Positions 48,268 to 63,564 of a DNA stretch of 64,000 bases are shown here, one piece after another. Positions within the stretch are counted from its first letter, which is position 1. Each line of letters starts with the position of its first letter. The notes beneath the pieces are model-generated. The model was not told the origin of the DNA. It was given only the letters and a program-made list of their open reading frames with translations, and searched no databases. Location of the stretch: positions 124,001 through 188,000 of IMG/VR virus record IMGVR_UViG_3300046516_001816, one strand, 5' to 3'. A program made the translations under genes and the position numbers.

Positions 48268-48271
48268 TATG
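48268..48271 (+). promoter_or_regulatory. Putative late promoter TATG
   Basis: 25 nt before ATG 48296. Confidence 0.4.
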
Positions 48272-48295
48272 TGACTTTCTAATCTGGGATAAATC

Positions 48296-51200
48296 ATGAC
48301 CGGCAATGTAGATCATCTTACTCACCTCAAGGGTGAAGTGGAACAGCTGGTAGATACGGTGGATGGTCTGGGGGTTGCGTTTAACTTGGCCACGGGTGGA
48401 GACATTGCTGTCTATGCCCAGCAAGCACTCGCAAATGCCGGTCAGGCTCAGACGGCATCAGCAGCCGCGTCCCAGTCCGCTACTACAGCTACTGCCGCTG
48501 CCACACAAACGGCACAAGACGTGATCAACGCCAATGCGGCGGCGACACAGGCCGCGGCTTCCGCAGGCAATGCCGCACAGTCGGCATCGACCGCGGTATC
48601 AGCACAACTCTCGGCGAGCTCCAGCGCAAGCGCAGCATCCAACTCGGCCATTGCCGCGGCGAACTCGGCTTCGACCATGGCCGCATCAGTAACCGCCGCA
48701 GGCAACAGCGCAGCGGCTGCTCACACCAGCGAAACCAATGCCGCGACTTCGGCTAGCGCTGCGCAGTCATCCGCAGCTCAGGTTACGGCGCTGTATAACG
48801 CCTGGGGTCAAGTCTTCCTGGGTGAATTCCCGTCAGATCCCACGCTGGATAATCAAGGCAATGCGCTCATCGATGGCGCGATGTATTTGAACACCACCGA
48901 AGTCCCGCCTGCGATCCGAATCTATACGGCGGGTAAGTGGCAGGACATGGATGAACAGGGCGTGCTGGCATCACAAGCCGCGCAGACTTCGGCTCAGCAA
49001 GCCGCCACGTCGTCCAGTGCAGCCCAGACCTTTGCCGGTACCGCAGCCACCAACGCGGCGGCTGCTAGCACGTCAGCTAATGCAGCAGCGACTTCGGCTA
49101 CGACAGCGTCTGATCTTGCCGGACAAGCAGCGACGTCCGCGACCAATGCGTCTGATTCGGAAATCGCGGCCGCGTCCAGCGCTACGGAAGCAGATGCAGC
49201 GGCAGCGTTGGCGCAAGACTGGGCTTCTAAGTCAGACGGTACGGTGGGTGGGACGGAATTCTTTTCGGCTGCTCACTATGCGCAGGAGGCGGATGCAGCG
49301 AACACCGCGGTGCAAAGCTCGATCTCCAATGCAGCTGCTTTGGGTGGAGCAGCTGCTACGTCGGCCACGCAAGCTGCATCCAGTGCAACTGCGGCTGCTA
49401 CGTCGGCTTCGCAGGCTTCGGGTTCGGCGACAGCCGCCGGTGTCAGTGCAGGTAATGCTGCTAACAGCGCTGCGGCGGCGCAGGCTTCTCAATCGGCAGC
49501 CGCGACCAGTGAAACCAATGCAGCGACGAGTGCGACGCATGCGGCTACCTCCGAAACGAATGCTGCGGCCAGTGCAACGTCGGCCAGTGCAGCGGACACG
49601 GATGCCAAAGCGCAAGCGACCAGTGCCACGACGGCTGCGCAATTGGCAGAAGACTGGGCGACGAAGACGAGTGCCACAGTAGACGGGGTGGAGTATTCGG
49701 CCAAGTACTACGCGAACCAAGCTGTAGCAGCAGACACGGATGCTCAGGCAAAGGCTGCTACGGCTGCAACGTCAGCGACCACCGCTACGACACAAGCCAC
49801 CAATGCTACCAGCAGCGCCACCTTGGCTCAGCAATGGGCAACGAGTGCAACGCTGGTGGCATCGACTGATTATTCGGCGAAGTATTACGCCAATGCAGCA
49901 GGTTCGTCGGCGACTGCCGCTGCAAACAGTGCGTCCTCGATTGCCGCGACGGCCACGGCTGTTGCAGCGAATGCCGCGCTGGCCGCCGCGTGGGCGTCGC
50001 AAGAATCGGGTACGGTGAATGGGACCACGTATTACTCGGCACTGTACTACGCGCTTCAAGCAGCGAATGCCGATACGGATGCTCAAACGCAGGCCACCAA
50101 TGCAGCGACGAGTGCTACGGCAGCTGCCTCCAGCGCTACAAATGCCGCAACATCGGCAAGCAGTCTTCAAAGTGCACTGGCTTCGTTTAGTGCATTGTTC
50201 CTGGGCCCTCATTCCACTCCGCCGACCGTAGACAACCAAGGCAACCCGTTGATCACCGGTGCGCAGTACATGGATTCGTCACAGAGTCCGCCGGTACTGA
50301 ATGAATGGACGGGCTCGGCTTGGGTGGCTGTCTCCAACGATGCTTCGGGCAACGCTCAACTTGCGGCGACTCAAGCGCAGGCGGCAGCGACTTCGGCATC
50401 AGGGAGTGCATCGGCGGCTTCGACGAGCGAATCGAATGCAAGTACTTCCGCCACTAATGCAGCAAATTCTGCAACTGCTGCTGCATCTTCCGCTTCTGCC
50501 AGTGCTGGTAGTGCTACTGCTGCTCAAACGGCTGCTAGCGCCGCACAAGCCGCTGACACGGATGCGACAACGCAAGCAACTAATGCGGGAGCATCTGCAA
50601 CAAGCGCAGCAGGCAGTGCAAGTGCAGCAGGAACTTCAGCAGGTCAGGCAACTGATGCAGCAGCACTTGCTCAAGCTTGGGCAAGCCAGGCAAGCGGAAA
50701 TGTAAACGGTACCGCGTTTGCGTCGGCATTGCAGTATGCGCAACAGGCTTCTAGCTCGGCCACCAGTGCGAGCACGGCAGTAACGCAGTCGCAAGCCAAT
50801 GCAACCCTGGCTCAATCGTGGGCCTCGCAGACCTCGGGTAAGGTCAATAGCAGCAACTATTACTCGGCGTATTACTACGCGACGCAGGCCGCGACGAGTG
50901 CTACTGCCGCTGGCACGAGTGCGACCACAGCTAGCACCGCAGCCACCTCCGCTACAGCGAGTCAAACCGCTGCGGCGACGTCCGCCACCAACGCCGCAGG
51001 CAGCGCGACGACGGCACAAACCGCCGCCACGACGGCGACGAATCAAGCAGCAGCAGCGAGTGCTTCGGCAAGTGCAGCAGCTGCTAGTGATACGGATGCG
51101 ACCACTCAGGCGAGTAATGCAGCAGCCTCGGCAACCACGGCCAGTAATGCCGCGACAACCGCCAGCGCTGCGGCGACCACCGCTACCACACAGGCGACTG

Positions 51201-54200
51201 CTGCGGCACAATCGGCAACGCAAGCAGCAGCATCGGCTACGGCCGCAGCGAGCTCAGCTACCAGTGCAGCATCGAGTGCCACCGCGGCAGCTGCGTCGGC
51301 GACAACGGCTAGCACTCAGGCAGGGAATGCCTCGACCTCGGCAACGAACGCAGCGAATTCTGCTGCTTCTATTCTGGGGCAGACGGGCACGAACCTCGCA
51401 CAAGTGCAAGCCATTCAGGCGCAGTTGAATGCAGCACTGGCGAGTTTTGGTTCCGTGTGGCTGGGTCAGCAAACCAGCGATCCGACGGTGGACTTGAACC
51501 ATCAGCCGATTGCCAATGGAGCGATGTACCAAAATACGTCGACCACGCCACCGGTGATTCGGATCTATGAAGGGGGAGTGTGGCAGGATTGGGATTTGCA
51601 AGGCGAGCAGGCGATGGCCAATGCAACCCTGGCGGCTTCCCAAGCTGCGCAGTCGGCGACCGCTTCGGCCACCAGTGCCCAGACATCGGCCACGGCTGCC
51701 AACACGGCCCTGACGGCGATGAATGCGGCACAGGCAGCCCAGACGGCTGCGCAAAGTGCAGACAGCGACGCAACGACTCAGGCCACCGCAGCAGCCGGGT
51801 CTGCCACCGCAGCAGATGGTTCGGCGCAGCAGGCAGAGTACTTCATGAACCAGGCGATTGCTTGGGCGACCTCGGATAGTGCCAACATTAACTTTTCGAA
51901 TCGGGGTTCGGCGTATTACTACGCGAGCGTAGCGTATAACTACTACGTCGCGATTCAGAACCTGAATTCGAGTGCAGGGACGAGTGCGACCAACGCGGCG
52001 AATAGTGCTAGCGCCGCAGCCGCTTCGTTGTCGTCGATTAACACGCAGTTGTCGCAGTCGGCAGCGAGTGCAACGGCCGCCGCCGCGTCGGCAGCGGATG
52101 CTGCGTCGAGTGCAGGTAACGCCAGCGCATCGGCTTCTGCTTCGGCCAATAGTGCAGCTACGTCGGCTACGCAGTCGTCTAATGCGTCCACGGCAGCGGC
52201 GAATGCCAACAACTCTGCGAATCAAGCGGCCACGAGTGCAACAGCGTCTGCACAATCAGCCACCGATGCGTCGACCTCTGCGTCTCAGGCAGCGGCTTAC
52301 CTGAACGACGTGACGAACCACACGGGTGATGCGTCTCAGTATTCGGCGCTGGCTCAGTCGTGGGCGTCGCAAGGCAGCGGCACGGTAGACGGGACCAGTT
52401 ACTCGGCCTACTACTATGCCAATCAAGCGGGCGTGTCGGCGACGAACGCAGGCAATAGTGCAGCAGGGGCCAGTAGCAGTGCGACTGCGGCAGCGGGCTC
52501 GGAAACGAACTCGGCAGCGTCAGCTGCGTTGGCACAGGCTTGGGCTAGCCAAGGTTCGGGCGTGGTCAATGGGACGAGTAGTTATTCGGCCTTCTACTAC
52601 GCTCAAGCGGCGGCGACGTCAGCGACCAGTGCAGCGAACGCTGTCACCACGGGTAGTCAGTATGTGACGTTGGCAGCTTCATGGGCTTCGCAAGCGACGG
52701 GTAATGTGGATGGTTCGCAATACAAGTCCGCCTTCCAGTACGCTACGCTGGCAGCCGCTTCGCAGCAGACGGCGAGCACCGCAGCGACGAATGCAGCCGG
52801 TAGCGCCACAGCTGCCGCTAGCAGTGCCACCGCAGCGGCCGGTTCGGCGAGTTCAGCAGCGACGTCGCTGGCCAGTCTCCAGGCAGCGTATGCGTCCTTT
52901 ACCAGCACTTGGTTGGGACCGTACAGCACGCCGCCTACCCAGACACCGACGGGTGGGGTGTTGACGATTGGTGCGCAGTACGAAGACACCAGTCAGACTC
53001 CGCCGGTAGTGATGACGTGGGATGGGTCGGTATGGAATCCGCCGAGTGCTGCGGATGCGAGTGCCTCGGCGAACGTCACGTTGGCCGCGGCTCAAGCGCA
53101 GTCTGCCGCAGGTACAGCCGCGACGTCCGCTTCGAATGCGTCGAGCTCAGAAACCAATGCCGCAGCTTCGGCGTCGGCCGCAGCTGCGTCGGCTTCGGCA
53201 GCTGATGCATCCAACACGGCGACCACTGCCAATGCCGCGTTGGCCCAAGCGTGGGCGAGCCAAACGTCTGGGAAAGTGAATGGTACGCAGTCGTATTCCG
53301 CGTACTACTACATGCTTCAGGCGCAGTCAGCTCTGAATAGTGTCCAGGCCTCGCAGACGGACGTGGATGCCAAACAAACGCAGGCAGACGCGAGTGCGTC
53401 CCTTGCCATGGCGTGGGCGTCGCAAAGCACGGGCGTGGTGAACAATACGCAGTACTATTCGGCGTATTACTACGCACAGCAGGCGCTGTCGGCTAACACC
53501 TCGGCTCAGTCAGCGCTGACGACGATTCAAGCAGCAGTGGCGCAGGCTCAAACTGCGGCCACCCAAGCGACCAATCTCGTGTCAGGCCCGAGCGGGTCGG
53601 CTAACTACTACTCGACGCAAGCGGCGAACTCCGCCACGACCGCGAGTACGGCAGCTACCAATGCACAAACCAGTGCATCGGCTGCGGCGACGTCTGCCGC
53701 GAATGCAGCTGCCGCAGCACAACAGGTGTTGACTAATTCGAATGCAGCCAGTACCAGTGCAACGAATGCGTCGAACAGTGCAACTGCTGCGGCAGGTAGT
53801 GCCACAGCTGCGCAGGGGAGCGCCACGGCAGCGAATACGTCAAAGACTAATGCAGCTACGTCAGCGACCGCTGCCGCAGGCAGTGCCAGTGCTGCTGCGG
53901 GGTCCGCCACGCAAGCGGCCAATAGTGCCACGTCCGCTACCAGTAGTGCGACCGCTGCCAGTAGTTCGGCCACGGCAGCGGCCGCCAGTGCCGCTAAGGC
54001 GCTGGTCAACGCGCGGATCTCGTGCTCCGTCACGGGTAATCCGAACGTGTTTCAAGAAGTGAAGTATCCGTTTGCGGGCGACACCTGTACGTTTGATACG
54101 AACTTTGGGCCTTCCGCAGCCATCTGTACGTTTATGGAAGGCACGAGTGCGACGGTGAATGTGTTGGCGTATAACGCGGCTCACCCGACTGGGGTGGTCG

Positions 54201-54367
54201 TGGGCACGCTCACGTTCACGCAAACGACAGGCAATAGCGGCACGGGTGTGTTTAGTTCAGTCTCGAGTACGACGACGGTGTTTAATCCGGGTGACACGAT
54301 TTCGTTGTTGCCGGTGAGCACCAATCTCGCCTCGATGGCTGTGACGTTTAAGGGTAGCTACAGTTAA
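48296..54367 (+). CDS. Very long fibre shaft (2023 aa) with 4 knob domains, 12 WAS..YSA.YYA knuckles and a C-terminal adaptor domain (cassette B)
   Basis: Ala/Ser/Thr heptads throughout; C-terminal VGTLTFTQ...VFNPGDTISL matches the end of 30412. Confidence 0.9.
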   Translation: MTGNVDHLTHLKGEVEQLVDTVDGLGVAFNLATGGDIAVYAQQALANAGQAQTASAAASQSATTATAAATQTAQDVINANAAATQAAASAGNAAQSASTAVSAQLSASSSASAASNSAIAAANSASTMAASVTAAGNSAAAAHTSETNAATSASAAQSSAAQVTALYNAWGQVFLGEFPSDPTLDNQGNALIDGAMYLNTTEVPPAIRIYTAGKWQDMDEQGVLASQAAQTSAQQAATSSSAAQTFAGTAATNAAAASTSANAAATSATTASDLAGQAATSATNASDSEIAAASSATEADAAAALAQDWASKSDGTVGGTEFFSAAHYAQEADAANTAVQSSISNAAALGGAAATSATQAASSATAAATSASQASGSATAAGVSAGNAANSAAAAQASQSAAATSETNAATSATHAATSETNAAASATSASAADTDAKAQATSATTAAQLAEDWATKTSATVDGVEYSAKYYANQAVAADTDAQAKAATAATSATTATTQATNATSSATLAQQWATSATLVASTDYSAKYYANAAGSSATAAANSASSIAATATAVAANAALAAAWASQESGTVNGTTYYSALYYALQAANADTDAQTQATNAATSATAAASSATNAATSASSLQSALASFSALFLGPHSTPPTVDNQGNPLITGAQYMDSSQSPPVLNEWTGSAWVAVSNDASGNAQLAATQAQAAATSASGSASAASTSESNASTSATNAANSATAAASSASASAGSATAAQTAASAAQAADTDATTQATNAGASATSAAGSASAAGTSAGQATDAAALAQAWASQASGNVNGTAFASALQYAQQASSSATSASTAVTQSQANATLAQSWASQTSGKVNSSNYYSAYYYATQAATSATAAGTSATTASTAATSATASQTAAATSATNAAGSATTAQTAATTATNQAAAASASASAAAASDTDATTQASNAAASATTASNAATTASAAATTATTQATAAAQSATQAAASATAAASSATSAASSATAAAASATTASTQAGNASTSATNAANSAASILGQTGTNLAQVQAIQAQLNAALASFGSVWLGQQTSDPTVDLNHQPIANGAMYQNTSTTPPVIRIYEGGVWQDWDLQGEQAMANATLAASQAAQSATASATSAQTSATAANTALTAMNAAQAAQTAAQSADSDATTQATAAAGSATAADGSAQQAEYFMNQAIAWATSDSANINFSNRGSAYYYASVAYNYYVAIQNLNSSAGTSATNAANSASAAAASLSSINTQLSQSAASATAAAASAADAASSAGNASASASASANSAATSATQSSNASTAAANANNSANQAATSATASAQSATDASTSASQAAAYLNDVTNHTGDASQYSALAQSWASQGSGTVDGTSYSAYYYANQAGVSATNAGNSAAGASSSATAAAGSETNSAASAALAQAWASQGSGVVNGTSSYSAFYYAQAAATSATSAANAVTTGSQYVTLAASWASQATGNVDGSQYKSAFQYATLAAASQQTASTAATNAAGSATAAASSATAAAGSASSAATSLASLQAAYASFTSTWLGPYSTPPTQTPTGGVLTIGAQYEDTSQTPPVVMTWDGSVWNPPSAADASASANVTLAAAQAQSAAGTAATSASNASSSETNAAASASAAAASASAADASNTATTANAALAQAWASQTSGKVNGTQSYSAYYYMLQAQSALNSVQASQTDVDAKQTQADASASLAMAWASQSTGVVNNTQYYSAYYYAQQALSANTSAQSALTTIQAAVAQAQTAATQATNLVSGPSGSANYYSTQAANSATTASTAATNAQTSASAAATSAANAAAAAQQVLTNSNAASTSATNASNSATAAAGSATAAQGSATAANTSKTNAATSATAAAGSASAAAGSATQAANSATSATSSATAASSSATAAAASAAKALVNARISCSVTGNPNVFQEVKYPFAGDTCTFDTNFGPSAAICTFMEGTSATVNVLAYNAAHPTGVVVGTLTFTQTTGNSGTGVFSSVSSTTTVFNPGDTISLLPVSTNLASMAVTFKGSYS

Positions 54368-54379
54368 AGGAAATGAGCG

Positions 54380-55501
54380 ATGAGCGCCACTCCGCAGTTT
54401 ATCGTCGGTGCTGAAGGTCTGGATCTCTATGCAGCCGGCGTCCTGGGGAATAAGTTCCCTTGGTTCCAGACCAATGCGACCTACCAAGGTCAAGTAGTAG
54501 CAGGCGCGGGCGTGTTCGGCGGCAATGGCCTCTCGTTCGCTGTAGCGGCAGCCAATCAGTCGGGCATGGAGTACCAGTTCCCCTCCACCATGCAGGTGAT
54601 GAAAAATCAGGTGGCAGCAGGGGGCAAAGGTGCATTTGGAGTGTGTGGGTGGGTTAAAATCGGCACCCCGGTGGCAACAGGGACCGATATTCTGTTAGCA
54701 CTGGGGTCGTCGGCTAATCCGGCGGCAGCCTTGCCTTTGCTGGGGCTGAACAACGCCACCGCGAGTGGGTTGAGTTTGGTGCTGCCGTCGACCACGGCCA
54801 ATCTGGTGTCGGCACCGCACTTGCTTGCCATTAACCCGAATAGCGCGTTGTGGGTCGGGGTGTATTTTTCGTACACGCCGAACGCGAATGGGACACTGAC
54901 CGGCACACTGTGTCTGTCGGGCTCAGGCATCTACCAGGATGTGCCGATTACCTTTAGTACCGATATCTTTACCGCGGGGCAGTTGTGTAACCGTCTGCGC
55001 TTTTACTCCGGGGTGGTGGCACCCTGGACGCTGGATGACATGATCATTCATGCGGTCTCGAATGCAGACACGCTCTGGCCCGCGCCGACGACGCTGAACC
55101 CGGAAGTGATTCCGCAGTATCTGCCGCGTCAAATCTCGCTGGCCACTGCCACGGGTCCGGGCAGTAAGGCGGACATGACGCCCTCGGGCAGCGAACCAAA
55201 CTGGCAATCGGCGACCGATCAAACGGGCGCGAATTCCGTGATTGCCACCGCCATTAACCAGACGGACACGTATAAGTGGAGTACGACGGCCACGGATATC
55301 AAAGCCGTGGTCTACCGAGGTCAGAGTGAGAAGTACAGTCAGTTGAGCGCTGTGCAGTTGGTGGGCGCGACCCAGAGCACGATGGGCTTGACCGAAGCGG
55401 GGCCGAATGATTTCATTGGCATTTCCGAAAACGACGGCGCGGCGCAGTGGACGGCGACCTCAGTGGCAGCGGCTGAGTTCGGTCAGACCTCGCATAACTA
55501 A
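54380..55501 (+). CDS. Lectin-like virion head protein, short type (paralog of 31442)
   Basis: SD AAGGA; GAEGLDLY N-terminus; WTLDDMII; C-terminal GAAQWTATSV. Confidence 0.7.
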   Translation: MSATPQFIVGAEGLDLYAAGVLGNKFPWFQTNATYQGQVVAGAGVFGGNGLSFAVAAANQSGMEYQFPSTMQVMKNQVAAGGKGAFGVCGWVKIGTPVATGTDILLALGSSANPAAALPLLGLNNATASGLSLVLPSTTANLVSAPHLLAINPNSALWVGVYFSYTPNANGTLTGTLCLSGSGIYQDVPITFSTDIFTAGQLCNRLRFYSGVVAPWTLDDMIIHAVSNADTLWPAPTTLNPEVIPQYLPRQISLATATGPGSKADMTPSGSEPNWQSATDQTGANSVIATAINQTDTYKWSTTATDIKAVVYRGQSEKYSQLSAVQLVGATQSTMGLTEAGPNDFIGISENDGAAQWTATSVAAAEFGQTSHN

Positions 55502-55509
55502 GGATTATC

Positions 55510-57795
55510 ATGACCGCTTTATTGATGGAAGGGTTTGAGAGCGTCATTGACACGCCGGACCTGACGAACCGCGGATGGAAGATGTCCAGCATGGCGTCGT
55601 CGAATGGCGCCAATACCATGACCTTGCCTTCGCGCACGGGCATGCCGGGTAGAGGATTGTTTTTGCGGGGCCCGTACAACTCTAATACGACCAACCTGCC
55701 GTTTGCCAATGCGGTGGATTTCGGGATGCTCGATACCGGTGCGTCCATTTATAGTCTCTGGCAGTCAGGCGGATTTTGTTTGGGCGTGAATGCCGTGTTT
55801 AACAAGGCGAACATGGTCCAGATCGCGAACTACATGACGCGTCAGATCGTGTACGATGGAGCGCAGTACTACTGGGCCCTGGGTCAGGACAATAGCAATG
55901 TGTGGCGGGTGTACTACTCCACGGACTTGCAGAACTGGACACAGACAACCATCACGCCCGGCAGCGCTGCCTTGGGTTCATCGATTACGGTGATCGGCAG
56001 CGGACCGAGCGCCACCGTGATTGTCGGAGGGTTTCTCATCAGCACCACGGCTGCGTTTTACTACTCGACCAATATGGGACTGGCCTGGACGGCGAGTAAC
56101 GCCACCGGGATCTCGGGCTCCAAGACAGTGATCGCCACGGGCAACGTCAACACTCCCATTATGTTCGGGGCCCAGCCCAGTAGTGGCGCGAACGGCGTTT
56201 TCTATCTGAGCAGTGTGTCAGGCGCGCCGGTGCAGGTGGCAGGCTTGGCGCTCACGGCCTCGAGCACGTATAACTCGGGTAACTCCAAGTTGGTGAATGG
56301 GATAGCGTGCTTTATCGCCTCCTCGGGTACAACGTCCCCGGCCGCCTTGACGACTAATGCGTCTATCGTGGCATGCTGTCCGGTGTCCAAAGACATGACG
56401 ATAGCGGCCAACTATACGTTGACGCCTTCGCTGGCGCATCAGTTGGCCGATATCACGTTCCTCAATAACACGTGGATCGCTGTAGGGCATGGCGGGATTT
56501 ATACGTCCCCCAATAGTGGTACGGTGGGTGCGCCGGCGGGCCCGACTGCTGCGTGGTCGACGGCACTGGCGGTGACACAAAACGGCGGCGTGTATTCGAT
56601 CGATACGAACGGTACGGTGGCCGTGGCCGTGGGTAATGATAACGTGAGCTCGGTAATTCCGGCCATCTATACGTCGACCGATGGCGTGAGTTGGGCGAAA
56701 CAGAATCGTCTTACCTTCACCACCGCCAACAACGTCGCGAACACGCAGCCGTTTACCAACGTCTTCTGGGACGGTCATCAGTTTGTGCTGACGGGTGGTG
56801 TGAGTAATAGCGTGGTGGCGACTTCACCGGATGGTTTTCAGTGGACGCCGCAGTACGTGCCCGACTACACGGAGTCGTCGGGGGGGTCCGTGGCCTCGAT
56901 GCTGGGTGTGTATTCCGGTGTGATGAACGCCGGCGCGTGGGTCGGTGCAAGTCAGGCCGCGGGCGGTTTTGCTCCGTGGACGACGGGGGCGGCCGCCCAA
57001 TGTGGGGTGGGACTGTTAGCCGGTCCAGTCAGTAATGGCGCCCGCAACGTGAGTGCCTGGTTGGTACCTGGCGGGACGACGACGAGCGCGATCGTAGCCA
57101 TTTCCTCGATGAGTGCCGCGGTACCGACCAACCCGTTGTCGCACTACTACGAGCTGATTGCCACGGCCACCGCGAGTGTGAACACCTTTACGTTCCAGCT
57201 CGCCATTGATGGCGTCGTGCAACCGGCACTCAGTCCGCCCGTTCAGTTTGCGGCCACGGGCGACACCACCGGTGCGTCGCATCTGATTTTCAACCTTCCG
57301 CGCTCAGGCAACTGGGTGATGGTGGATGACCTTTATTTGACGAACTTCTCAGGCTCAAATAACGTGGGTCAACTGGGTGTCACCAGTGTGTTGCCGTGGG
57401 TGCCCTCCAGTGATGTACAGGCGCAGTATAACCGAACGGCGGGATCGTCTAACGCCTCGCAAGTCGTGGGTCCGCTCTCCAATGCTCAGACGAGCGTTAA
57501 TGCTCAAGCGGTGGGGGCGAAGGATATCTACGGCATGACCACTAGCGTGCCAGTCGGCTATCGCGTGCGCGCCATGCAGGCAGAAGCCTACTTTTCGAAG
57601 TTTGGTGCCACGGGGGCAGCCGCAACGGTCGGCATTGTCAGTAACGGCGCGGAAAGCGATTCGGCGCAAGCGAACGCGGCGACTAGCACGCCCGTGTATG
57701 CCTCGGTCCTGTGCGACACCGATCCGAAGACGGGTGCTGCCTGGACGGTAGCGGCTGCACAGGCGGCGGAGATTGCGATCGTCAAAGCAACTTAA
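55510..57795 (+). CDS. Lectin-like virion head protein with inserted beta-propeller (long type 1)
   Basis: MEGFE N-terminus; YSTDL..WT, STNMG..W, STDG..W, SPDG..W (BNR/Asp-box-like) repeats; DPKTGAAWT C-terminus. Confidence 0.8.
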   Translation: MTALLMEGFESVIDTPDLTNRGWKMSSMASSNGANTMTLPSRTGMPGRGLFLRGPYNSNTTNLPFANAVDFGMLDTGASIYSLWQSGGFCLGVNAVFNKANMVQIANYMTRQIVYDGAQYYWALGQDNSNVWRVYYSTDLQNWTQTTITPGSAALGSSITVIGSGPSATVIVGGFLISTTAAFYYSTNMGLAWTASNATGISGSKTVIATGNVNTPIMFGAQPSSGANGVFYLSSVSGAPVQVAGLALTASSTYNSGNSKLVNGIACFIASSGTTSPAALTTNASIVACCPVSKDMTIAANYTLTPSLAHQLADITFLNNTWIAVGHGGIYTSPNSGTVGAPAGPTAAWSTALAVTQNGGVYSIDTNGTVAVAVGNDNVSSVIPAIYTSTDGVSWAKQNRLTFTTANNVANTQPFTNVFWDGHQFVLTGGVSNSVVATSPDGFQWTPQYVPDYTESSGGSVASMLGVYSGVMNAGAWVGASQAAGGFAPWTTGAAAQCGVGLLAGPVSNGARNVSAWLVPGGTTTSAIVAISSMSAAVPTNPLSHYYELIATATASVNTFTFQLAIDGVVQPALSPPVQFAATGDTTGASHLIFNLPRSGNWVMVDDLYLTNFSGSNNVGQLGVTSVLPWVPSSDVQAQYNRTAGSSNASQVVGPLSNAQTSVNAQAVGAKDIYGMTTSVPVGYRVRAMQAEAYFSKFGATGAAATVGIVSNGAESDSAQANAATSTPVYASVLCDTDPKTGAAWTVAAAQAAEIAIVKAT

Positions 57796-57809
57796 GTGAG
57801 TAAAAGATC

Positions 57810-60071
57810 ATGACCTGTGTGTTAACAGAAGGATTTGAGTCCGTCCTCGATGATACGGATGTGGTGCGTCGCGGCTGGGTGCGCCCGAGCGCTGTCACCT
57901 TGAGTGGAGCTGGGACACTGGGGATGCCTGCACGGACGGGACAACCAGGTCGTGGTCTACTCTTGCGCGGACCGTATTATAGTGCCGGTGGCTTACCTAA
58001 TGCCACTAGCGCGATAGCGGACTTCGGGATGCTCAATACGGGCAAGAGTATCTACAGCCTCTGGCAGGCCGGTGGGTTTGTAGCGGGTTTTAGTGCAGCA
58101 TTCAATAGCTATCCGCACACGACTCAGCTGCAAGTAGCCGCACCCGATACCCAGCAGATCGTCTATGACGGCGCCCAGTATTACTGGGCCATTGGGCAGA
58201 TCTATTCGAGTTCGACCAACGTCGTGATGTATTCGACCGATCTGGTGAACTGGACCCCGTGTGGGGCCCAGCCGACCCTGCTTCAGAACGCAGTGATCCA
58301 AGTGATCGGTAGCGGACCCAACGCCACGATCATTCTCGGTAATAAGAGCGGCGTGTCGCCGATGGTGCCTTCCTACAGCACCAATATGGGATCGAGTTGG
58401 AGCACGATGGCTATCGGTGCCTCGGATAATATCAAGAAGATTCTGCCGGCTGCCGGCCCGTCTTCCGCGCCGTATATTGCCGTTGGCTACTATCCGGGTA
58501 ACGGATTTCGATTGTGGAGTTATGCGTCGCTTTCGGCTACCCCGACTTTGATCACAGGAGCGAACGTGACGGGGACCGTGACGTATGGTACCGCATGGGC
58601 ACGGGTGAGTAATGGCTTCTATGTGGTCTGCGGGATGTCGATGGCAGCGTCCGGCACTGCGCCAGCGGCGGGGTCCTCGTTCGTGTGGTATTGCCCGACC
58701 AGTGTGGACCCAACGGTCGGCAGTAACTGGGTAGCGCTGACAAGCGCCAGCACGAACTATTTCAATGACGGTATCTACTTCAACAATCGTTTTGTGATGG
58801 TGGGGTATAACGGCATCTATTGGAATGGGGCGGCGAGCAATAACACCTGGATCAATGCGCTCACAACAGGTACTGCTTCGGTGTACTCGATTGCCTCCAA
58901 TGGTTCCATGCTGGTCGCAGTCGGCCAGGATCCGGTGAACACCACGTTGCCGGCGATTTGGACCTCCCCAGACGGGATGACCTGGACCAAGCAGAACAAG
59001 CTGATTCTGTCCAACGCCGGAGGCAATGGCAACAATACGATGTTTTCGAATATCTATTGGGATGGGGCGCGCTGGGTGTTGACCGGCGGCGTGAATTGCA
59101 ATGTGATCGCCACCTCGACGGACGCCGTTACCTGGACGCCGCTCTATTACCCGGATTATCCGGAAACGGGCGTTACGGCGGGCTCCATGCTGGGTGTGTT
59201 TTCAGGAACCCTCAACGCCGCTAACAATATATTTACGCCGTGGTCAGCGACCACAGGAGTGGTGGGGCTCGGGGTAAACGCGACCCCGGTCTCCAGTCTG
59301 AATCGGGCGCTCAATGGTGCGACCGTGACCGGGGCAAACACGATTAGCAATATTGCGCCGGCGACGACGGTCTTTACGACCAATGTGGTCGGCCCGCAAC
59401 CCGTGGGTCAGCTCACGCACTACTACGAGCTCATTGCGACGGCGACGGCTTCTCAGAATACTTTCACCGTTCAGTGGGCGCTTGATGGGGTGATCCAACC
59501 GGGCGTGATTGGGACGATTCTCTTTGCCGGCGCAGCCGACACCGGCTCAGCGCAGCTCTGTCTGAATCTGCCGCGCAGCGGGGCGTTTGTCATGATTGAT
59601 GACATTTATGTCAACACCATGAATGGCTCGAGCAATGTCGGGCAGCTCGGACCGGTCAGTGTGTTCCCTTGGACGCCAACGTCGGACACGCAGGCGCAGA
59701 TGACCGCGTCGCTTGCGGGCTCCCACGCTGCACAAATTGCAGGTCCGCTGTCCACCAACACGGGTTCGCTCTCGACGTATGTGCAAGGCACGAAAGACAT
59801 CTATGCCACGAGAGAGTCCATCCCAGCGGGCTTTACGATTAAGGCTGTTTCAGCAGAGGCGATCTTCACCAAGAACGGCACGATTGGGGGCGCGGGTAAC
59901 GTCGGGATCACCAGCAACGGGCACGAAGTCGATTCGACCGCGGTGTCCGCGCCGGTGGCCAATACGTATTACTTCGCCTCGGTGCTCTTGGAGACGGATC
60001 CCAACACGGGCCTGGCGTGGACCAAGACAGCGCTGGATCTCGCGGGTATTACCGTGAGCAAAACGAATTAA
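57810..60071 (+). CDS. Lectin-like virion head protein with inserted beta-propeller (long type 2)
   Basis: TEGFE; same motif order as 55510; DPNTGLAWT. Confidence 0.8.
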   Translation: MTCVLTEGFESVLDDTDVVRRGWVRPSAVTLSGAGTLGMPARTGQPGRGLLLRGPYYSAGGLPNATSAIADFGMLNTGKSIYSLWQAGGFVAGFSAAFNSYPHTTQLQVAAPDTQQIVYDGAQYYWAIGQIYSSSTNVVMYSTDLVNWTPCGAQPTLLQNAVIQVIGSGPNATIILGNKSGVSPMVPSYSTNMGSSWSTMAIGASDNIKKILPAAGPSSAPYIAVGYYPGNGFRLWSYASLSATPTLITGANVTGTVTYGTAWARVSNGFYVVCGMSMAASGTAPAAGSSFVWYCPTSVDPTVGSNWVALTSASTNYFNDGIYFNNRFVMVGYNGIYWNGAASNNTWINALTTGTASVYSIASNGSMLVAVGQDPVNTTLPAIWTSPDGMTWTKQNKLILSNAGGNGNNTMFSNIYWDGARWVLTGGVNCNVIATSTDAVTWTPLYYPDYPETGVTAGSMLGVFSGTLNAANNIFTPWSATTGVVGLGVNATPVSSLNRALNGATVTGANTISNIAPATTVFTTNVVGPQPVGQLTHYYELIATATASQNTFTVQWALDGVIQPGVIGTILFAGAADTGSAQLCLNLPRSGAFVMIDDIYVNTMNGSSNVGQLGPVSVFPWTPTSDTQAQMTASLAGSHAAQIAGPLSTNTGSLSTYVQGTKDIYATRESIPAGFTIKAVSAEAIFTKNGTIGGAGNVGITSNGHEVDSTAVSAPVANTYYFASVLLETDPNTGLAWTKTALDLAGITVSKTN

Positions 60072-60080
60072 GGAAGCGTC

Positions 60081-62366
60081 ATGACTTTACAGTACATGGA
60101 AGGGTTTGAGACGGTCGTCGATTATTCCGACTGGACCAAGCGAGGCTGGTTCAATAGTGTTAACCCCAGCATTGCGGGTAACTCCGTGGCGGGGCTGCCT
60201 TCGCGTACCGGCACCGTAGGGCGGGGTCTGATGCTCAAGGGTCCGTATGCGGGCAACGCCAGCTTGCCGCTCGCGGTGGCGAGTACGTCTGACTTTGGCA
60301 TGTATCCGCTGGGTAAGAGTATCAATAGCCTCTGGCAAGCCGGGGGTTTTGTGCTCGGGGTCAATGCGACCTTTAACAAAGTCAACAAACAGGAAATCGC
60401 GGCGTGGTGTCCGAATCAGATCTGTTACGACGGCGCCCAGTATTATTGGGCGGTTTGTGTCAATAACGCGGGCGCGGTTCAGGTCTGTTACTCGACGGAC
60501 CTGATGACCTGGACGCCTACCGTTACACAGCCAGCGGGACTGGGGCTCCTTTCGACGATTGCCGTCTCGGGCAGCGGCGCCACCGCCACCGTGGTGGTGG
60601 GTCACTACCAGTCGCAGCAGAATTCTTTTCCGGTCTTTACCACCAATATGGGATTGAACTGGAGCAACGGTACCACGCTGGCCGGCGCCACGATTCTGCG
60701 CATTTTCCCGTCAGGCAATCCGACCACTCCGTGGGCTTACGTCGCTCAGGTTGGCACCGCGGTAGAATGCGGGGTGTTCTCGGGCGGGTTAACAGGTACC
60801 GCTAACACGTTGTCGACGACAACCTTTAGCAATTACGGCCAGGCAGGCTATCCGTATGCGATTGGTAACGGTAAGCTCGTCAATGGCGTGGTGTGTATGC
60901 TGGGGACCCTGACGGGCAATGCCGTGCCTAGCACGCTGGGTTCAACGGGTCAATATTTCTGGACGTGTAACAACACGCTCGATATGACCGTGGCGGCTAA
61001 CTGGAAACAGAGCGCCAATACGATATTAGGATACTTTCAGGACATTACGTTCTTTAACAACAGGTGGTATGCCGTGGCCGGCGGGGGTATTCTGAGCGCG
61101 CCTCAAACTGGCACGGCGCAAGTACCTCAAGGGCCGACGGCTGCCTGGGCGGCGGTTGTCAACTTTGGCAATAACGGGTATTGGCTTAACTCCATCGACA
61201 CGAACGGTTCGATCATGGTGGCGGTGGGGTCCGATAACGTTAATGTCAACTACGGCGCGATCTGGACTTCCACAGACGGCGTGAGCTGGACCAAGGCAAA
61301 TCGTTTCCCGGGTGGGGTGGGCGGTATTCAGGCTGGCGGCGTGGGCGGGTTCACGAATGTTTTCTGGGATGGTCGACAGTTTGTATTAACCGGGGGTCCG
61401 AATCAGAATCTGATCGCCGTGTCGCCGGACGGTCTGAACTGGAATCCGCTTTACTATCCGGATTACGCCGAAAGTGTCGTCCCTACTTGTGCGTCCATCT
61501 TTGGACTGTATTCCGGTACGGTCAATGGTTCGGGCTTGTATGTACCCTGGTCCGTCGCCAGTGGTACGTTTTGCGCCGTCGGCATAAACGCATCGGCGCA
61601 ATCCAACGGCACGCGCACGGTCACCAACTACCTGGTGACGGCCTATAGTACACCAACTGCCACGGCGACAGCGTCGGCCGCGGTCTCTACAGCGCAGCTC
61701 TCGCACTACTACGAGCTGATTGCCACCGCAGGCGCCACGGCGAATTCGTTTACGTTCCAGCTGGCGATTGACGGCGTGATTGTCCCCAACACGAGTGCAG
61801 CGTGGTCATTCGCTCCGTCGGCCGACACCGGTACGCAGATGGCGTATTTGAACTTGCCACGCAATGGTAACTTCGTGATGCTGGACGACATTTACCTCAC
61901 GGACTTTGTGGCGGATCCGTTGGGTAACACTGGTCAACTGGGGATTGTCAATATCATCGGCGGGCAACCGAGCTCGGATGCAGCCGTGCAGTTCACTCAG
62001 CAGGGCACGGCGGCGTCTCATGCTGCCCAGCTGGCGGGGGCGTTGTCCAATTCGGAAGGCGGGGCGTACACCTACACGGTGGGCGCGAAAGATACCTACA
62101 ACGCCACGATACCGATCCCGGCGAACTACAAGATCCAAGCAGTCCAGGTCGAGGCGTATTTCACGCGCTACGGCAACTCGGGTGCCAATGCATCGGTGGG
62201 GATTCTGAGCGGTACGCACGAAGTGGATTCGCCGGCTGTATCGGCGATGAGTGCGACGGTCCCGTCGTATGCGAGCTTGATGCAAAACGTGGATCCGAAT
62301 ACCGGCGCCCAGTGGACGATTGCGGGCCTTCAGGCAGCGAAGCTGACGATCAATAAGCTGACCTAA
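60081..62366 (+). CDS. Lectin-like virion head protein with inserted beta-propeller (long type 3)
   Basis: MEGFE; same motif order; DPNTGAQWT. Confidence 0.8.
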   Translation: MTLQYMEGFETVVDYSDWTKRGWFNSVNPSIAGNSVAGLPSRTGTVGRGLMLKGPYAGNASLPLAVASTSDFGMYPLGKSINSLWQAGGFVLGVNATFNKVNKQEIAAWCPNQICYDGAQYYWAVCVNNAGAVQVCYSTDLMTWTPTVTQPAGLGLLSTIAVSGSGATATVVVGHYQSQQNSFPVFTTNMGLNWSNGTTLAGATILRIFPSGNPTTPWAYVAQVGTAVECGVFSGGLTGTANTLSTTTFSNYGQAGYPYAIGNGKLVNGVVCMLGTLTGNAVPSTLGSTGQYFWTCNNTLDMTVAANWKQSANTILGYFQDITFFNNRWYAVAGGGILSAPQTGTAQVPQGPTAAWAAVVNFGNNGYWLNSIDTNGSIMVAVGSDNVNVNYGAIWTSTDGVSWTKANRFPGGVGGIQAGGVGGFTNVFWDGRQFVLTGGPNQNLIAVSPDGLNWNPLYYPDYAESVVPTCASIFGLYSGTVNGSGLYVPWSVASGTFCAVGINASAQSNGTRTVTNYLVTAYSTPTATATASAAVSTAQLSHYYELIATAGATANSFTFQLAIDGVIVPNTSAAWSFAPSADTGTQMAYLNLPRNGNFVMLDDIYLTDFVADPLGNTGQLGIVNIIGGQPSSDAAVQFTQQGTAASHAAQLAGALSNSEGGAYTYTVGAKDTYNATIPIPANYKIQAVQVEAYFTRYGNSGANASVGILSGTHEVDSPAVSAMSATVPSYASLMQNVDPNTGAQWTIAGLQAAKLTINKLT

Positions 62367-62376
62367 GGAGGCGGGT

Positions 62377-62991
62377 ATGACCACAGGTGTATACGCCCAA
62401 GGGGTCAATGGCCAGTATCTTGCCCAGCAGATCACCTCCGTGCGCATTGGCGGGGTGAATGGACAAGTGCTGGCGCAGTTTTCCCCGAAGTCGGTAAAGA
62501 CGCGTGCGACTAACGGTCAGATGTTGGTGTCAGCCCCCAGTGCCATTAATGTCCAGGCAGTCAATGGTCAGGTACTGGCGTATCGGTCAGGCGTGAAAGC
62601 ATCAGGCGCCGGCATACAGGTGATGACCAAAGCCAAAGGTGCGGTGATTTCACAAGGCGTCGGCGTCCAGGTACTGCTGAAGCAGCCGGGGGGTGTGGAA
62701 GTCATTCGTGCTAACATGCAGGTGTTGGTGCGTTCACGCTCTGCAATGCAAGCCCAGGCTGTGGGCGGGCAGATGCTGGTGAGTAAGCTGCTGGATGTGC
62801 GTACGACCCAAGTCATGATGGAAGTGATTGGGGAAGTGCCGCCATACTTACCGGTCACTGGGGTGAACCTGGAAGTCATCGGGGCAGGGTTCCCGGCGGC
62901 TCCCCTGAAGCAAGTGACGCTCGAAGTGATTGGCGCCACGACCCTTCCGTACCAGAGCCCTGGACAGACGGTCACGTGGTGGAGCAGCTAA
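62377..62991 (+). CDS. Protein of 11 tandem ~17-aa beta-strand repeats (cassette B scaffold candidate)
   Basis: SD AAGGAGG; repeats such as GVNGQYLA, GVNGQVLA, AVNGQVLA, GVGVQVLL, QVMMEVIG, GVNLEVIG, QVTLEVIG. Confidence 0.8.
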   Translation: MTTGVYAQGVNGQYLAQQITSVRIGGVNGQVLAQFSPKSVKTRATNGQMLVSAPSAINVQAVNGQVLAYRSGVKASGAGIQVMTKAKGAVISQGVGVQVLLKQPGGVEVIRANMQVLVRSRSAMQAQAVGGQMLVSKLLDVRTTQVMMEVIGEVPPYLPVTGVNLEVIGAGFPAAPLKQVTLEVIGATTLPYQSPGQTVTWWSS

Positions 62992-63099
62992 GCAAAATTT
63001 ACTGTCCACCGGTATCCTCTGGAGAAGGGATCGGGGAAGTTTGAGCCCTCGAGCATCGCTGGTTGCTTCTCTGTTTCTTTCATGAGAAACGTCATTAGA

Positions 63100-63131
63100 C
63101 CCACGCCCTTTGCCGGGTGTGGGCCTTTTTT
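63100..63131 (+). terminator. Intrinsic terminator
   Basis: CCCACGCCC / GGGTGTGGG stem, then CCTTTTTT. Confidence 0.65.
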
Positions 63132-63160
63132 CCCTCAATTGCCTTTTCAGGACTATTTTG

Positions 63161-63550
63161 ATGAGTTATCATCCCGGCGCGATTTTGATGGACCTGCATC
63201 CCGCGATTCGTAAACTGCAAGACCGGGTGCTCATTGAAATGGAAGTTGCGTGTTCAGACGACGGTGCGGCGTATTTTACCGACCAGTTAATCGAAGACGT
63301 AGTGTCCTGTATCGATCAAGAAAATATGGCGATGAGTTGTTTGTATGACTACGCCGATCGCCAGAAGCAATCCCTGCTCGATTGTGGTCGAGACGCAGAA
63401 GCCCAGCGCATGGCCAGCGAGATTGTGGACTTTGGTCGTGACCTGATTAATAACTTCAAGGAGCATCGCGTCTACGAGAACGGACAGCTGAACTACGTCT
63501 TCTCGGGACGCTGTGCGAGTAAGACCTTGATCTTATCGCGGTACTGTTAA
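63161..63550 (+). CDS. Hypothetical protein (jumbo-phage type)
   Basis: AGGA before ATG 63161; acidic helical protein. Confidence 0.65.
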   Translation: MSYHPGAILMDLHPAIRKLQDRVLIEMEVACSDDGAAYFTDQLIEDVVSCIDQENMAMSCLYDYADRQKQSLLDCGRDAEAQRMASEIVDFGRDLINNFKEHRVYENGQLNYVFSGRCASKTLILSRYC

Positions 63551-63564
63551 ATTAAGAAAAACCA

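What the first reader, a model, noticed from the sequence alone, without database searches (positions are those of the whole stretch)
62377..62991. Candidate donor-strand scaffold: a protein built only of tandem beta-strands that could string lectin heads together
Seen: this 204-aa ORF is 11 repeats of ~17 aa with pattern x-Phi-xxxx-Phi-xx-[QE]-Phi-Phi (GVYAQGVNGQYLAQ, SVRIGGVNGQVLAQ, SVKTRATNGQMLVS, AINVQAVNGQVLAY, GVKASGAGIQVMTK, AVISQGVGVQVLLK, GVEVIRANMQVLVR, AMQAQAVGGQMLVS, DVRTTQVMMEVIGE, YLPVTGVNLEVIGA, AAPLKQVTLEVIGA), joined by short linkers, several with Pro/Gly. It sits right after four paralogous head genes that all stop a few residues after a 'G(A)xWT...aliphatic strand' motif (DPxTGxxWT in the three long ones). 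From memory (unverified), single-chain homologs of that jelly-roll continue with one more strand like 'VRVTQVYVEV', which is what the last three repeats resemble. Inference: each head lacks its last beta-strand and receives it in trans from the repeat protein, as in chaperone-usher pili. One scaffold could then display up to 11 receptor-binding domains, like a viral scaffoldin. Eight Q-type and three E-type repeats may select long versus short heads.
Basis: partly seen in the sequence, partly recalled or inferred. Interest (0 to 1): 0.88.

Follow-up and report, generated by a model that had tools for sequence, protein, structure and literature searches.

The report
Strand-repeat partner of phage fibre heads
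A small jumbo-phage protein made only of 17-residue beta-strand repeats always sits in the same gene cassette as the phage's receptor-binding "head" genes and is longer in genomes with more head genes, so it probably holds or assembles them, though not by the strand-donation trick first proposed.

Summary
ORF 62377-62991 is a real gene. Its 204-aa product is 11 tandem units of 17 residues: eight "Q-type", three "E-type" and a conserved ...TWWSS tail.

It belongs to a family that I found in no Pfam, PHROG, NCBIfam or PDB search. I found relatives only by synteny, in 15 or more phage loci, including phiRSL1 ORF185, BcepSauron gp278, BCSR5, RsoM2USA gp420 and Motura. The gene always lies inside or at the end of an array of head genes. 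The heads are predicted as a beta-propeller plus beta-sandwiches.

Unit number (3 to 23) rises with the number of head genes (Spearman 0.92, n = 11, lineages not independent). E-type units occur only where a short head gene is present.

The proposed mechanism, heads lacking a last strand that the repeats donate, is not supported:
- The AlphaFold2 head model (pLDDT 85) ends in its own confident terminal strand.
- No aligned homologue extends further at the C-terminus.
- 87% of unit spacings are exactly 17 residues, which suits a self-stacking fold.
- The low-confidence model of the repeat protein resembles beta-solenoids only.

Best reading (about 0.4): a repeat-built adaptor or scaffold for the heads. 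The main rival is a non-virion assembly chaperone (0.25).

The parts
62365..62371 (+). Ribosome-binding site AAGGAGG, 5 nt before the ATG. It overlaps the stop codon of head gene 3.
   Evidence: Read directly from the sequence.
62377..62991 (+). Gene for the 204-aa repeat protein (stop codon included).
   Evidence: ORF list. Homologues sit in the same position in at least 15 loci.
62383..62790 (+). Eight Q-type units (aa 3-138). Consensus: [TPS]-G-phi-x-[AV]-Q-[AG]-V-x-G-Q-V-L-phi-x-[AQ]-P. The first four units and the eighth are the 'NGQ/GGQ' subtype. Units 5-7 are the 'xQV[LM]..[KR]' subtype.
   Evidence: Unit table and position counts over 79 Q-type units from the family. The AlphaFold2 model is all-beta here, with mean pLDDT of about 52-68 per 10-residue block.
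62791..62943 (+). Three E-type units (aa 139-189). Consensus: P-V-x-x-V-x-[ML]-E-V-I-G-[AE]-G.
   Evidence: 21 E-type units in the family. AlphaFold2 pLDDT is below 50 from residue 146. There is a weak hit to phrog_13560 (E 0.0012).
62944..62988 (+). C-terminal tail ending in ...PGQTVTWWSS. An aromatic end occurs in every complete member (TWWTS, TWFTPS, WWFS, VTWFNT, VIWFTNMR, VVWF, NTWSG); locus L023 is cut short at the contig end.
63100..63133 (+). Intrinsic-terminator-like hairpin (9-bp stem with 7 G-C pairs, then a T run). It closes the fibre/head operon.
   Evidence: It is the strongest site in 47500-64000.
60081..62366 (+). Long head 3 (761 aa, 'H3 type'). In the window's clade this type is always the last head gene, next to the repeat gene.
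   Evidence: phrog_30887 E 2.5e-82. AlphaFold2 model, Foldseek searches and head tree.
57810..60071 (+). Long head 2 (753 aa, 'H2 type').
55510..57795 (+). Long head 1 (761 aa, 'H1 type').
54380..55501 (+). Short head (373 aa). It is conserved in most related cassettes. Its C-terminal ~85 aa weakly resemble the last domain of the long heads.
48296..54367 (+). 2023-aa Ala/Ser/Thr-rich tail fibre without an intramolecular chaperone domain. It is the first gene of the conserved fibre-heads-repeat module.
   Evidence: phrog_38058 'tail fiber protein' E 1.5e-56. It has no Peptidase_S74 domain. Synteny with phiRSL1 ORF182.

Best explanation
The ORF encodes a member of an undescribed family of tail-fibre-module proteins built from strictly 17-residue beta repeats with a conserved aromatic C-terminal tail. 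It is co-transcribed with the head genes. The heads are propeller-plus-sandwich proteins resembling carbohydrate-binding proteins or glycosidases.

My preferred reading is that it is the non-catalytic adaptor or scaffold that holds these heads on the fibre. In this reading:
- the repeats stack into one regular beta structure (a solenoid-like rod, or a fibrous oligomer);
- that structure exposes a conserved Gln/Leu stripe;
- its length is set by the number of units;
- the C-terminal ...TWW[ST]S tail and the E-type units form the invariant anchoring end.

Shown: the gene, the repeats, the family, the synteny and the co-variation with head number.
Inferred: the fold, presence in the virion and direct binding to the heads.
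For: 1. Strict genetic linkage. In every locus examined that carries full-length, propeller-containing heads and is not cut short, the repeat gene lies 1-14 nt from a head gene. Motura also fits, but its second long head is assigned by size and position only. In the window the gene is followed by the operon terminator.

2. The cassette travels as a unit. The heads of phiRSL1 and RsoM2USA are near-identical (branch lengths 0.1-0.19), although the RsoM2USA paper places that phage with Xanthomonas phage XacN1 (PMC8504454). Both carry the repeat gene.

3. Co-expansion. Total head genes versus units: 2 heads with 6 units (three loci), 3 with 7, 4 with 8, 3 with 12, 4 with 11 (four loci), 6 with 21, 7 with 23, 2 with 4 and 2 with 3. 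Spearman 0.92.
- In the window's clade, the minimal set is H3 head + short head with 3 Qb + 3 E units.
- Extra H1/H2 heads go with extra N-terminal NGQ units: 0 extra heads with 0 units, 2 with 4, 4 with 16, 5 with 18.
- In the Sauron clade, 1, 2 and 3 long heads go with 6, 7 and 8 units.

4. Regularity. 85 of 98 unit-to-unit steps are exactly 17 aa. Conserved ladder positions are V(-3), G(-1), Q(0), V(+1) and L(+2).

5. The AlphaFold2 model is all-beta. Its only Foldseek neighbours, though not significant, are beta-solenoids (RTX roll, pectate lyase, pentapeptide repeat, tailspikes).

6. The heads have no N-terminal trimerisation or anchor domain. Their conserved N-terminus (MEGFE...) lies in the region that matches the mini-heads. 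They would therefore need a partner to be mounted.
Against: - There is no direct evidence that the protein is in virions or binds the heads.
- The solenoid fold rests on a poor model (pLDDT 53.7, 8-sequence alignment) and non-significant Foldseek matches (best E 0.36).
- There is no constant number of units per head (1.5-4). L004 (3 heads) has more units than the window (4 heads).
- A solenoid of 11 coils would be only about 5 nm long (my estimate from the usual 4.8 A rise per coil), which is short for docking four 80-kDa heads.
- In Achromobacter phage AchV4, the positionally analogous repeat protein gp28 is not in the published virion mass-spectrometry list, while neighbouring mini-heads gp25 and gp26 are (PMC7996906). 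That analogue is not demonstrably homologous.
- The correlation rests on a few related lineages.
Confidence: 0.4

Rival explanations
1. Non-virion assembly chaperone. The repeats transiently bind nascent heads, or the fibre that lacks its own chaperone domain, and are released, as tail-fibre assembly proteins encoded downstream of receptor-binding genes are.
For: - The gene lies directly downstream of receptor-binding-type genes. From my own knowledge, that is the usual place for fibre chaperones.
- The three other fibres in the window carry their own Peptidase_S74 chaperone domain. The 2023-aa fibre and the heads do not.
- The AlphaFold2 monomer is poorly defined, especially the E-type end (pLDDT below 50). 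That fits a protein that folds only on a client.
- The AchV4 analogue gp28 is absent from the virion mass-spectrometry list.
Against: - There is no match to any known chaperone family in Pfam, PHROGs or NCBIfam.
- A catalytic chaperone has no obvious need to lengthen with the number of clients, or to keep an exact 17-residue period.
- AchV4 mini-head gp27 is also missing from that list, so the negative result is weak.
Confidence: 0.25
2. Each head lacks its last beta-strand and receives it in trans from one repeat (donor-strand complementation), so that one chain displays up to 11 heads.
For: - Genetic linkage and co-expansion, as above.
- E-type units occur only where a short head is present: about a dozen loci with both, against 2 with neither.
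- The first half of each unit alternates hydrophobic and polar residues as a beta-strand would.
- The E-type region is not predicted to fold alone.
Against: - The head model is confident. Its last domain has about ten strands and ends in its own strand after the DPNTGxxWT motif and a helix.
- No aligned homologue extends beyond that strand at the C-terminus. This covers the 36 full-length jumbo-phage heads and the last-domain alignment of 26, plus the inspected termini of the mini-heads of AchV4, JS26 and Chi. The heads match phrog_2448 up to profile position 325-329 of 335.
- Lu11 has a mini-head with no repeat partner nearby.
- The exact 17-residue spacing argues against free linkers.
- The second half of each unit (Q-V-L-phi) is hydrophobic on both faces, unlike an edge donor strand.
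- Units per head vary from 1.5 to 4.
- In L031 all three E-type units changed E to A or S with no matching charge change in the short head.
Confidence: 0.1
3. An independent thin fibre segment or distal adhesin, functionally like the small joint or tip proteins of T4-type long fibres. It would be a trimeric beta-repeat shaft that extends the 2023-aa fibre and does not bind the heads.
For: - A 17-residue unit with a Gly at the turn and a Pro/Gly-rich linker recalls, from my own knowledge, the 15-17-residue triple beta-spiral shaft repeats.
- Both faces of the second strand are hydrophobic, as expected at an oligomer interface.
- The gene lies in a cluster of four fibre genes.
Against: - It does not explain why the gene follows the heads rather than the fibre. 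In RsoM2USA, L026, L027 and L032 it sits between head genes.
- It does not explain why length tracks head number while the fibre length does not (L004 and L014: 1116 and 1102 aa).
- Trimerisation is untested.
Confidence: 0.15

Closest known systems
Hypothetical proteins phiRSL1 ORF185 (BAG41634.1), BcepSauron gp278 (QBQ74658.1), BCSR5 QRE00316.1, RsoM2USA gp420 (AVH85348.1) and Motura QDH83704.1
   Same: They share the unit motif, the 17-residue period and the aromatic C-terminal tail. They hold the same position next to homologous head genes.
   Different: They have 3-7 units instead of 11. The phiRSL1 and RsoM2USA proteins have no E-type units, and those phages have no short head. All are annotated only as hypothetical.
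Casjensviridae modules: Chi gp32-35 + gp36, AchV4 gp25-27 + gp28, JS26 (four mini-heads + a 707-aa protein)
   Same: Each has an array of paralogous two-sandwich 'mini-heads' with the same N-terminal M..[MD]GF[DE] and C-terminal ...W..FG.x. signatures. The AchV4 and JS26 mini-heads match the window head in Foldseek at E 1e-10 to 1e-11. The array is followed by one protein made of short tandem strand-like repeats, some with a V-x-Q-V-L core, and then by lysis genes.
   Different: The mini-heads lack the propeller. The repeat proteins are 578-709 aa, with 17-25-residue units of several kinds. A profile of the window's Q unit does not score AchV4 gp28 or JS26 above shuffled controls. This is therefore analogy in architecture, not shown homology.
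Chaperone-usher pilus donor-strand complementation
   Same: The idea of a beta-strand supplied in trans. The first half of each unit alternates hydrophobic residues.
   Different: The heads are predicted complete with their own terminal strand. There is no chaperone or usher. Many strands sit in one chain at a fixed 17-residue period.
Beta-solenoid repeat proteins (RTX beta-roll, curli-type and bactofilin-type coils; from my own knowledge)
   Same: Constant short coil length, Gly at turns, stacked Gln and hydrophobic ladders. These are the only kind of fold that Foldseek returned for the model.
   Different: No significant structural or sequence match (best E 0.36). No calcium-binding motif. 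The model confidence is low.
Branched multi-receptor-binding-protein fibres of phages such as phiKp24 and CBA120 (PMC9700779; CBA120 from my own knowledge), and the cellulosome scaffoldin as a concept
   Same: Several different receptor-binding modules are carried by one virion. A scaffold whose repeat number matches the number of modules would work like a scaffoldin.
   Different: From my own knowledge, known branched fibres attach through N-terminal adaptor domains of trimeric tailspikes, not through a separate short-repeat protein. Cohesin modules are roughly 150-residue domains, not 17-residue units.

Membership tests
Donor-strand complementation (chaperone-usher type) | The acceptor domain is an incomplete beta-sandwich that lacks its last strand and has an open hydrophobic groove. 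| tested here: not met
   In the AlphaFold2 head model the last domain has about ten strands. It ends with helix 742-747 and strand 749-754 (model numbering) in blocks with mean pLDDT 91-94. No aligned homologue has an extra C-terminal strand. I could not inspect the surface for a groove because no coordinates were available.
Donor-strand complementation (chaperone-usher type) | The donor strand has strictly alternating hydrophobic residues and sits on a flexible extension. | tested here: inconclusive
   Positions -8, -6 and -4 alternate. The core Q-V-L-phi is hydrophobic on both faces. The linkers are fixed in length: 85 of 98 steps are 17 aa.
Donor-strand complementation (chaperone-usher type) | A physical strand insertion is seen in a complex. 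| not testable with these tools
   No multimer prediction was available, and fused or read-through sequences are not accepted.
Beta-solenoid repeat proteins | Constant coil length with conserved stacking (ladder) positions. | tested here: met
   The period is 17 in 87% of steps (range 16-19). Among 79 Q-type units: V/I at -3 in 61, G at -1 in 43, Q at 0 in 73, V/I at +1 in 64, L/M at +2 in 69.
Beta-solenoid repeat proteins | A confident solenoid structure, or a significant structural match. | tested here: inconclusive
   pLDDT 53.7, pTM 0.46. The listed Foldseek PDB neighbours are overwhelmingly beta-solenoids, but all have E of 0.36 or higher.
Triple beta-spiral or other trimeric fibre shaft | A homotrimer with 15-20-residue repeats and Gly/Pro at the turn. 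| not testable with these tools
   The repeat length and the Gly/Pro positions are compatible. The oligomeric state is unknown.
Known phage tail-fibre assembly chaperones (Pfam, PHROG and NCBIfam models) | A sequence match to a chaperone family. | tested here: not met
   No family passed in Pfam, PHROGs or NCBIfam for the window protein or seven relatives.
Known phage tail-fibre assembly chaperones (Pfam, PHROG and NCBIfam models) | Encoded immediately downstream of the receptor-binding gene it serves. | tested here: met
   The gap to a head gene is 1-14 nt in all loci.
phrog_30887 / phrog_2448 (the head proteins) | A full-length profile match. | tested here: met
   The three long heads match phrog_30887 at E 3e-56 to 2.5e-82 over the whole length. 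Their C-terminal ~230-240 aa match phrog_2448 at E about 1e-12 to 1e-13. Both families are of unknown function.
Glycoside hydrolase family 43 / sialidase-type propeller enzymes (the head proteins) | A Pfam match above threshold, and catalytic residues. | tested here: not met
   Pfam GH43 scores 17 bits against a cutoff of 32.2. Foldseek E is 1e-8 but TM is only 0.2-0.3 overall. I did not examine catalytic residues. This is fold resemblance only.

The most novel reading that the evidence does not exclude
The protein is a phage 'scaffoldin'. It would be a single chain, or a trimer of chains, whose short beta units are docking sites for the globular heads by beta-sheet augmentation or lateral binding. 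The number and subtype of units (NGQ-type, LLRQP-type, EVIG-type) would then encode how many heads, and which ones, a virion displays. Host-range breadth would evolve by joint duplication of a head gene and a few 17-residue units.
Probability: 0.15. Interest if true: 0.85.

Novelty: new variant of a known kind. Interest (0 to 1): 0.6.

Why it matters
Jumbo phages of the phiRSL1 and Sarumanvirus kind, and many soil metagenome relatives, carry up to seven paralogous receptor-binding-type heads. How such globular proteins, which have no anchor domain, are mounted on a fibre is unknown.

A small repeat protein whose length tracks the number of heads is the obvious candidate for the missing organiser. 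It also gives a simple handle for experiments: delete it, truncate it, or count its units.

The family was absent from every family and structure database that I searched, and it is invisible to ordinary sequence searches. It is therefore likely to be routinely left as 'hypothetical'. A similar arrangement in Chi-like siphophages suggests that the principle may be widespread.

Tried and rejected
1. Sequence searches with the repeat protein found almost nothing. This covers the word-indexed search, alone and as an 8-sequence profile, and exhaustive phmmer (only a 57-aa fragment). The family had to be collected by synteny.

2. Near-identity DNA search against the phage collection: no match.

3. 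Fixed stoichiometry (three units per trimeric head): rejected. Ratios range from 1.5 to 4, and L004 versus the window contradicts it.

4. Heads docking on the repeated GAxYxNT..PP..GxW motif of the long fibre. There are four copies in the window and four heads. Rejected, because L004 and L014 both have two copies with three and two heads, and the motif also occurs in another fibre.

5. Charge co-variation. L031 has lost the Glu in all three E-type units, but its short head shows no compensating loss of a conserved Lys or Arg.

6. Homology between the window's Q unit and the Casjensviridae repeat proteins: not detectable above shuffled controls. The QVL-type motif is enriched in Chi gp36, with 16 matches against a mean of 1.9 and a maximum of 11 in shuffles.

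7. A profile of the heads' last domain against PDB sequences: no relative.

8. The literature held here says nothing on these genes in phiRSL1, RsoM2USA, Matilda or Chi.

Full report
**What is there**

The window belongs to a 285-kb viral contig, IMGVR_UViG_3300046516_001816. It has no close DNA relative among sequenced phages.

ORF 62377-62991 (+) encodes 204 aa. An AAGGAGG ribosome-binding site precedes it and overlaps the stop codon of the previous gene. About 110 nt downstream lies the strongest terminator-like hairpin of the region (63100-63133). The ORF is therefore the last gene of an operon.

The protein is 11 tandem units. Their cores [QE][VMYIL][LMI] lie at residues 13, 30, 48, 65, 81, 98, 115, 132, 149, 166 and 183. 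The motif occurs 13 times, against a mean of 1.3 and a maximum of 7 in 5000 shuffles. There is no repeat at the DNA level.

**Surroundings**

Upstream lies a large tail-fibre cluster.
- Three fibre genes have C-terminal Peptidase_S74 intramolecular chaperone domains: 38986-45579, 45632-47053 and 47053-48207.
- Next comes a 2023-aa Ala/Ser/Thr-rich fibre without such a domain (48296-54367).
- Then a 373-aa 'short head'.
- Then three paralogous 753-761-aa 'long heads'.

The long heads belong to phrog_30887, of unknown function. Their C-terminal ~230-240 aa match phrog_2448 up to position 325-329 of the 335-position profile.

**The heads**

I built an AlphaFold2 model of head 3 from a 36-sequence alignment. 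It is good: pLDDT 85, pTM 0.87. In the secondary-structure string it shows:
- an N-terminal beta region;
- a long run of short strands, consistent with a propeller;
- two further strand-rich blocks, at about residues 490-603 and 620-756.

Foldseek against the PDB finds GH43 xylosidases and arabinofuranosidases, sortilin and a bacterial sialidase. E reaches 1e-8, but overall TM-scores are low, as expected for a multi-domain query.

Against predicted viral structures it finds the BCSR5 head at E 5e-36. It also finds many 320-360-aa phage proteins at E 1e-9 to 1e-13, including a virion structural protein of Achromobacter phage AchV4. These correspond to the two sandwich domains without the propeller.

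The last domain has about ten strands. It ends with a helix and then its own strand (KLTINK, ORF residues 754-759), in blocks with mean pLDDT 91-94. No aligned homologue continues beyond it. The short head is not a BLAST-level paralogue. Only its last ~85 residues align weakly, in register.

**The family of the repeat protein**

Ordinary searches fail, and no Pfam, PHROG or NCBIfam family fits. Synteny recovers a clear family.

A tblastn hit to BcepSauron and BcepSaruman led to gp278. That gene lies directly after the head homologue gp279. phiRSL1 ORF185 follows the heads ORF183 and ORF184.

I then fetched the contigs that encode head homologues and the annotated phages RsoM2USA, BCSR5 and Motura. 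In every locus not cut short, these showed a small gene with the same units 1-14 nt from a head gene. It is usually the last gene of the array. In RsoM2USA, L026, L027 and L032 it lies between head genes.

Every complete member ends in an aromatic tail (TWWSS, TWWTS, TWFTPS, WWFS, VTWFNT, VVWF, NTWSG). Across 98 unit-to-unit steps, the spacing is exactly 17 residues in 85 and 16-19 in the rest.

The Q-type consensus is [TPS]-G-phi-x-[AV]-Q-[AG]-V-x-G-Q-V-L-phi-x-[AQ]-P. The E-type consensus is P-V-x-x-V-x-[ML]-E-V-I-G.

**Co-variation with the heads**

| Locus | Long heads | Short head | Units |
|---|---|---|---|
| BcepSauron, BCSR5, L014 | 1 | 1 | 6 (3 Q + 3 E) |
| L026 | 2 | 1 | 7 |
| L032 | 3 | 1 | 8 |
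| L004 | 2 | 1 | 12 |
| window, L012, L031, L034 | 3 | 1 | 11 |
| L005, L013, L015 | 5 | 1 | 21 |
| L007 | 6 | 1 | 23 |
| phiRSL1 | 2 | 0 | 4 |
| RsoM2USA | 2 | 0 | 3 |

Sources. The L007 gene starts at the GTG at 14656.

The Spearman correlation between total heads and units is 0.92 for 11 loci. The lineages are not independent.

A head tree gives the structure behind this. In the window's clade there are three head types.
- The H3 type is always the last head, next to the repeat gene.
- L014 has only H3 plus the short head, and only three LLRQP-type Q units plus three E units.
- Genomes with extra H1 or H2 heads have extra N-terminal NGQ-type units: 2 extra heads with 4 units, 4 with 16, 5 with 18.

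In the Sauron clade, each further long head goes with one further unit.

E-type units occur in all loci with a short head and in neither of the two without one. Those two are phiRSL1 and RsoM2USA. Their cassettes are near-identical (branch lengths 0.1-0.19), so they count as one event. The same near-identity shows that the heads and the repeat gene moved together between two different jumbo-phage lineages that infect Ralstonia (PMC8504454 places RsoM2USA with Xanthomonas phage XacN1).

**Structure of the repeat protein**

The AlphaFold2 model, built from an 8-sequence alignment, is poor: pLDDT 53.7, pTM 0.46. It is all-beta. The Q region scores about 52-68 per 10-residue block, and the region from residue 146 (the E-type units and the tail) scores below 50. 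Foldseek finds nothing significant. The listed neighbours (E 0.36 to about 8) are overwhelmingly beta-solenoids: RTX roll, pectate lyases, pentapeptide-repeat proteins, tailspikes and LpxD.

The exact period, the conserved ladder positions and a core that is hydrophobic on both faces suggest a regular self-stacking or oligomeric beta structure. They do not suggest independent strands on free linkers.

**Verdict on the mechanism**

The specific donor-strand mechanism loses support, for these reasons:
- the heads appear complete;
- the remembered longer homologues were not found;
- there is no constant number of units per head;
- Lu11 has a related mini-head with no repeat partner nearby;
- the concerted Glu-to-Ala/Ser change in L031 has no counterpart in its short head.

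I could not run a complex prediction or inspect the model surface, so strand augmentation is not excluded.

I rank the explanations as follows: adaptor or scaffold of regular beta structure, 0.4; non-virion assembly chaperone, 0.25; independent fibre segment or adhesin, 0.15; donor-strand model, 0.1.

The chaperone rival is supported by the gene's position. It also has weak support from AchV4: the positionally analogous repeat protein gp28 is not among the virion proteins found by mass spectrometry, while mini-heads gp25 and gp26 are (PMC7996906). However, mini-head gp27 is missing from that list too, and gp28 is not demonstrably homologous.

**Wider pattern**

Chi-like siphophages carry the same architecture. 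AchV4 has gp25-27 followed by gp28, JS26 has four mini-heads followed by a 707-aa protein, and Chi has gp32-35 followed by gp36. In each case an array of paralogous mini-heads is followed by one long protein made of short tandem units, then by lysis genes. The last six units of Chi gp36 have a V-x-Q-V-L-[EQ] core, much like the window's. The papers held here do not discuss these genes.

**Novelty and score**

The gene family is uncatalogued and its role is untested. The kind of thing it most likely is, a tail-fibre accessory protein, is known. I rate it a new variant of a known kind, with interest 0.6. If the 'phage scaffoldin' reading proved true (about 0.15), it would deserve about 0.85.

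Noticed in passing
window 38986-48207 (+): Three further tail-fibre genes (2197, 473 and 384 aa) each end in a Peptidase_S74 intramolecular chaperone domain. With the 2023-aa fibre, the phage therefore encodes at least four different fibres in a row.
   Followed up: partly
window 48296-54367 (+), protein residues 194, 655, 1075, 1559: The 2023-aa fibre has four copies of a GAxYxNTxxxPP...GxW motif. The 2197-aa fibre has two. The copy number does not follow head number in relatives.
   Followed up: yes
L002 (phiRSL1) 7691-12455 and L009 (RsoM2USA) 4003-8666: The two heads and the repeat gene are near-identical between phiRSL1 and RsoM2USA (tree branch lengths 0.1-0.19), although the phages belong to different lineages. 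This looks like recent transfer of a host-range cassette. The gene order differs: the repeat gene is last in phiRSL1 and lies between the heads in RsoM2USA.
   Followed up: partly
L037 (phage Chi) 4635-11031; L035 (AchV4) 16050-20991; L036 (JS26) 949-7477: Chi-like siphophages carry arrays of three or four 'mini-head' paralogues followed by a 578-709-aa protein made of several kinds of short tandem repeats, then lysis genes. In the records examined, nearly all of these genes are annotated only as hypothetical or virion structural proteins.
   Followed up: partly
L031:16950-17567: In this close relative, all three E-type units carry Ala or Ser in place of the otherwise invariant Glu (LAVIG, LSVIG, MAVIG). 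This is a concerted change across the units of one protein.
   Followed up: partly
L038 (Pseudomonas phage Lu11) 6587-7684: The jumbo phage Lu11 has a single mini-head homologue (365 aa, tblastn E 2e-25 to AchV4 gp26) with a Pro-rich C-terminal extension. There is no obvious strand-repeat protein within 7 kb.
   Followed up: no
window about 63565-64000 (+), running off the end: The ORF that begins MRKNYIERMI... carries an SGGMDS motif. From my own knowledge, that motif is typical of PP-loop ATPases such as QueC. The related locus L012 has a gene with a faint QueC Pfam hit a few genes further downstream. Together these hint at a deazaguanine DNA-modification pathway.
   Followed up: no
L001:12361-12648, L010:9033-9323, L011:12588-12842, L026:14847-15137, L032:17017-17283: In the Sauron, BCSR5 and Motura type cassettes, a second small conserved gene (84-96 aa, ending in ...LLPV/LAPIV...) closes the head array. 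It follows either the repeat gene or the last head. The window has no counterpart.
   Followed up: no
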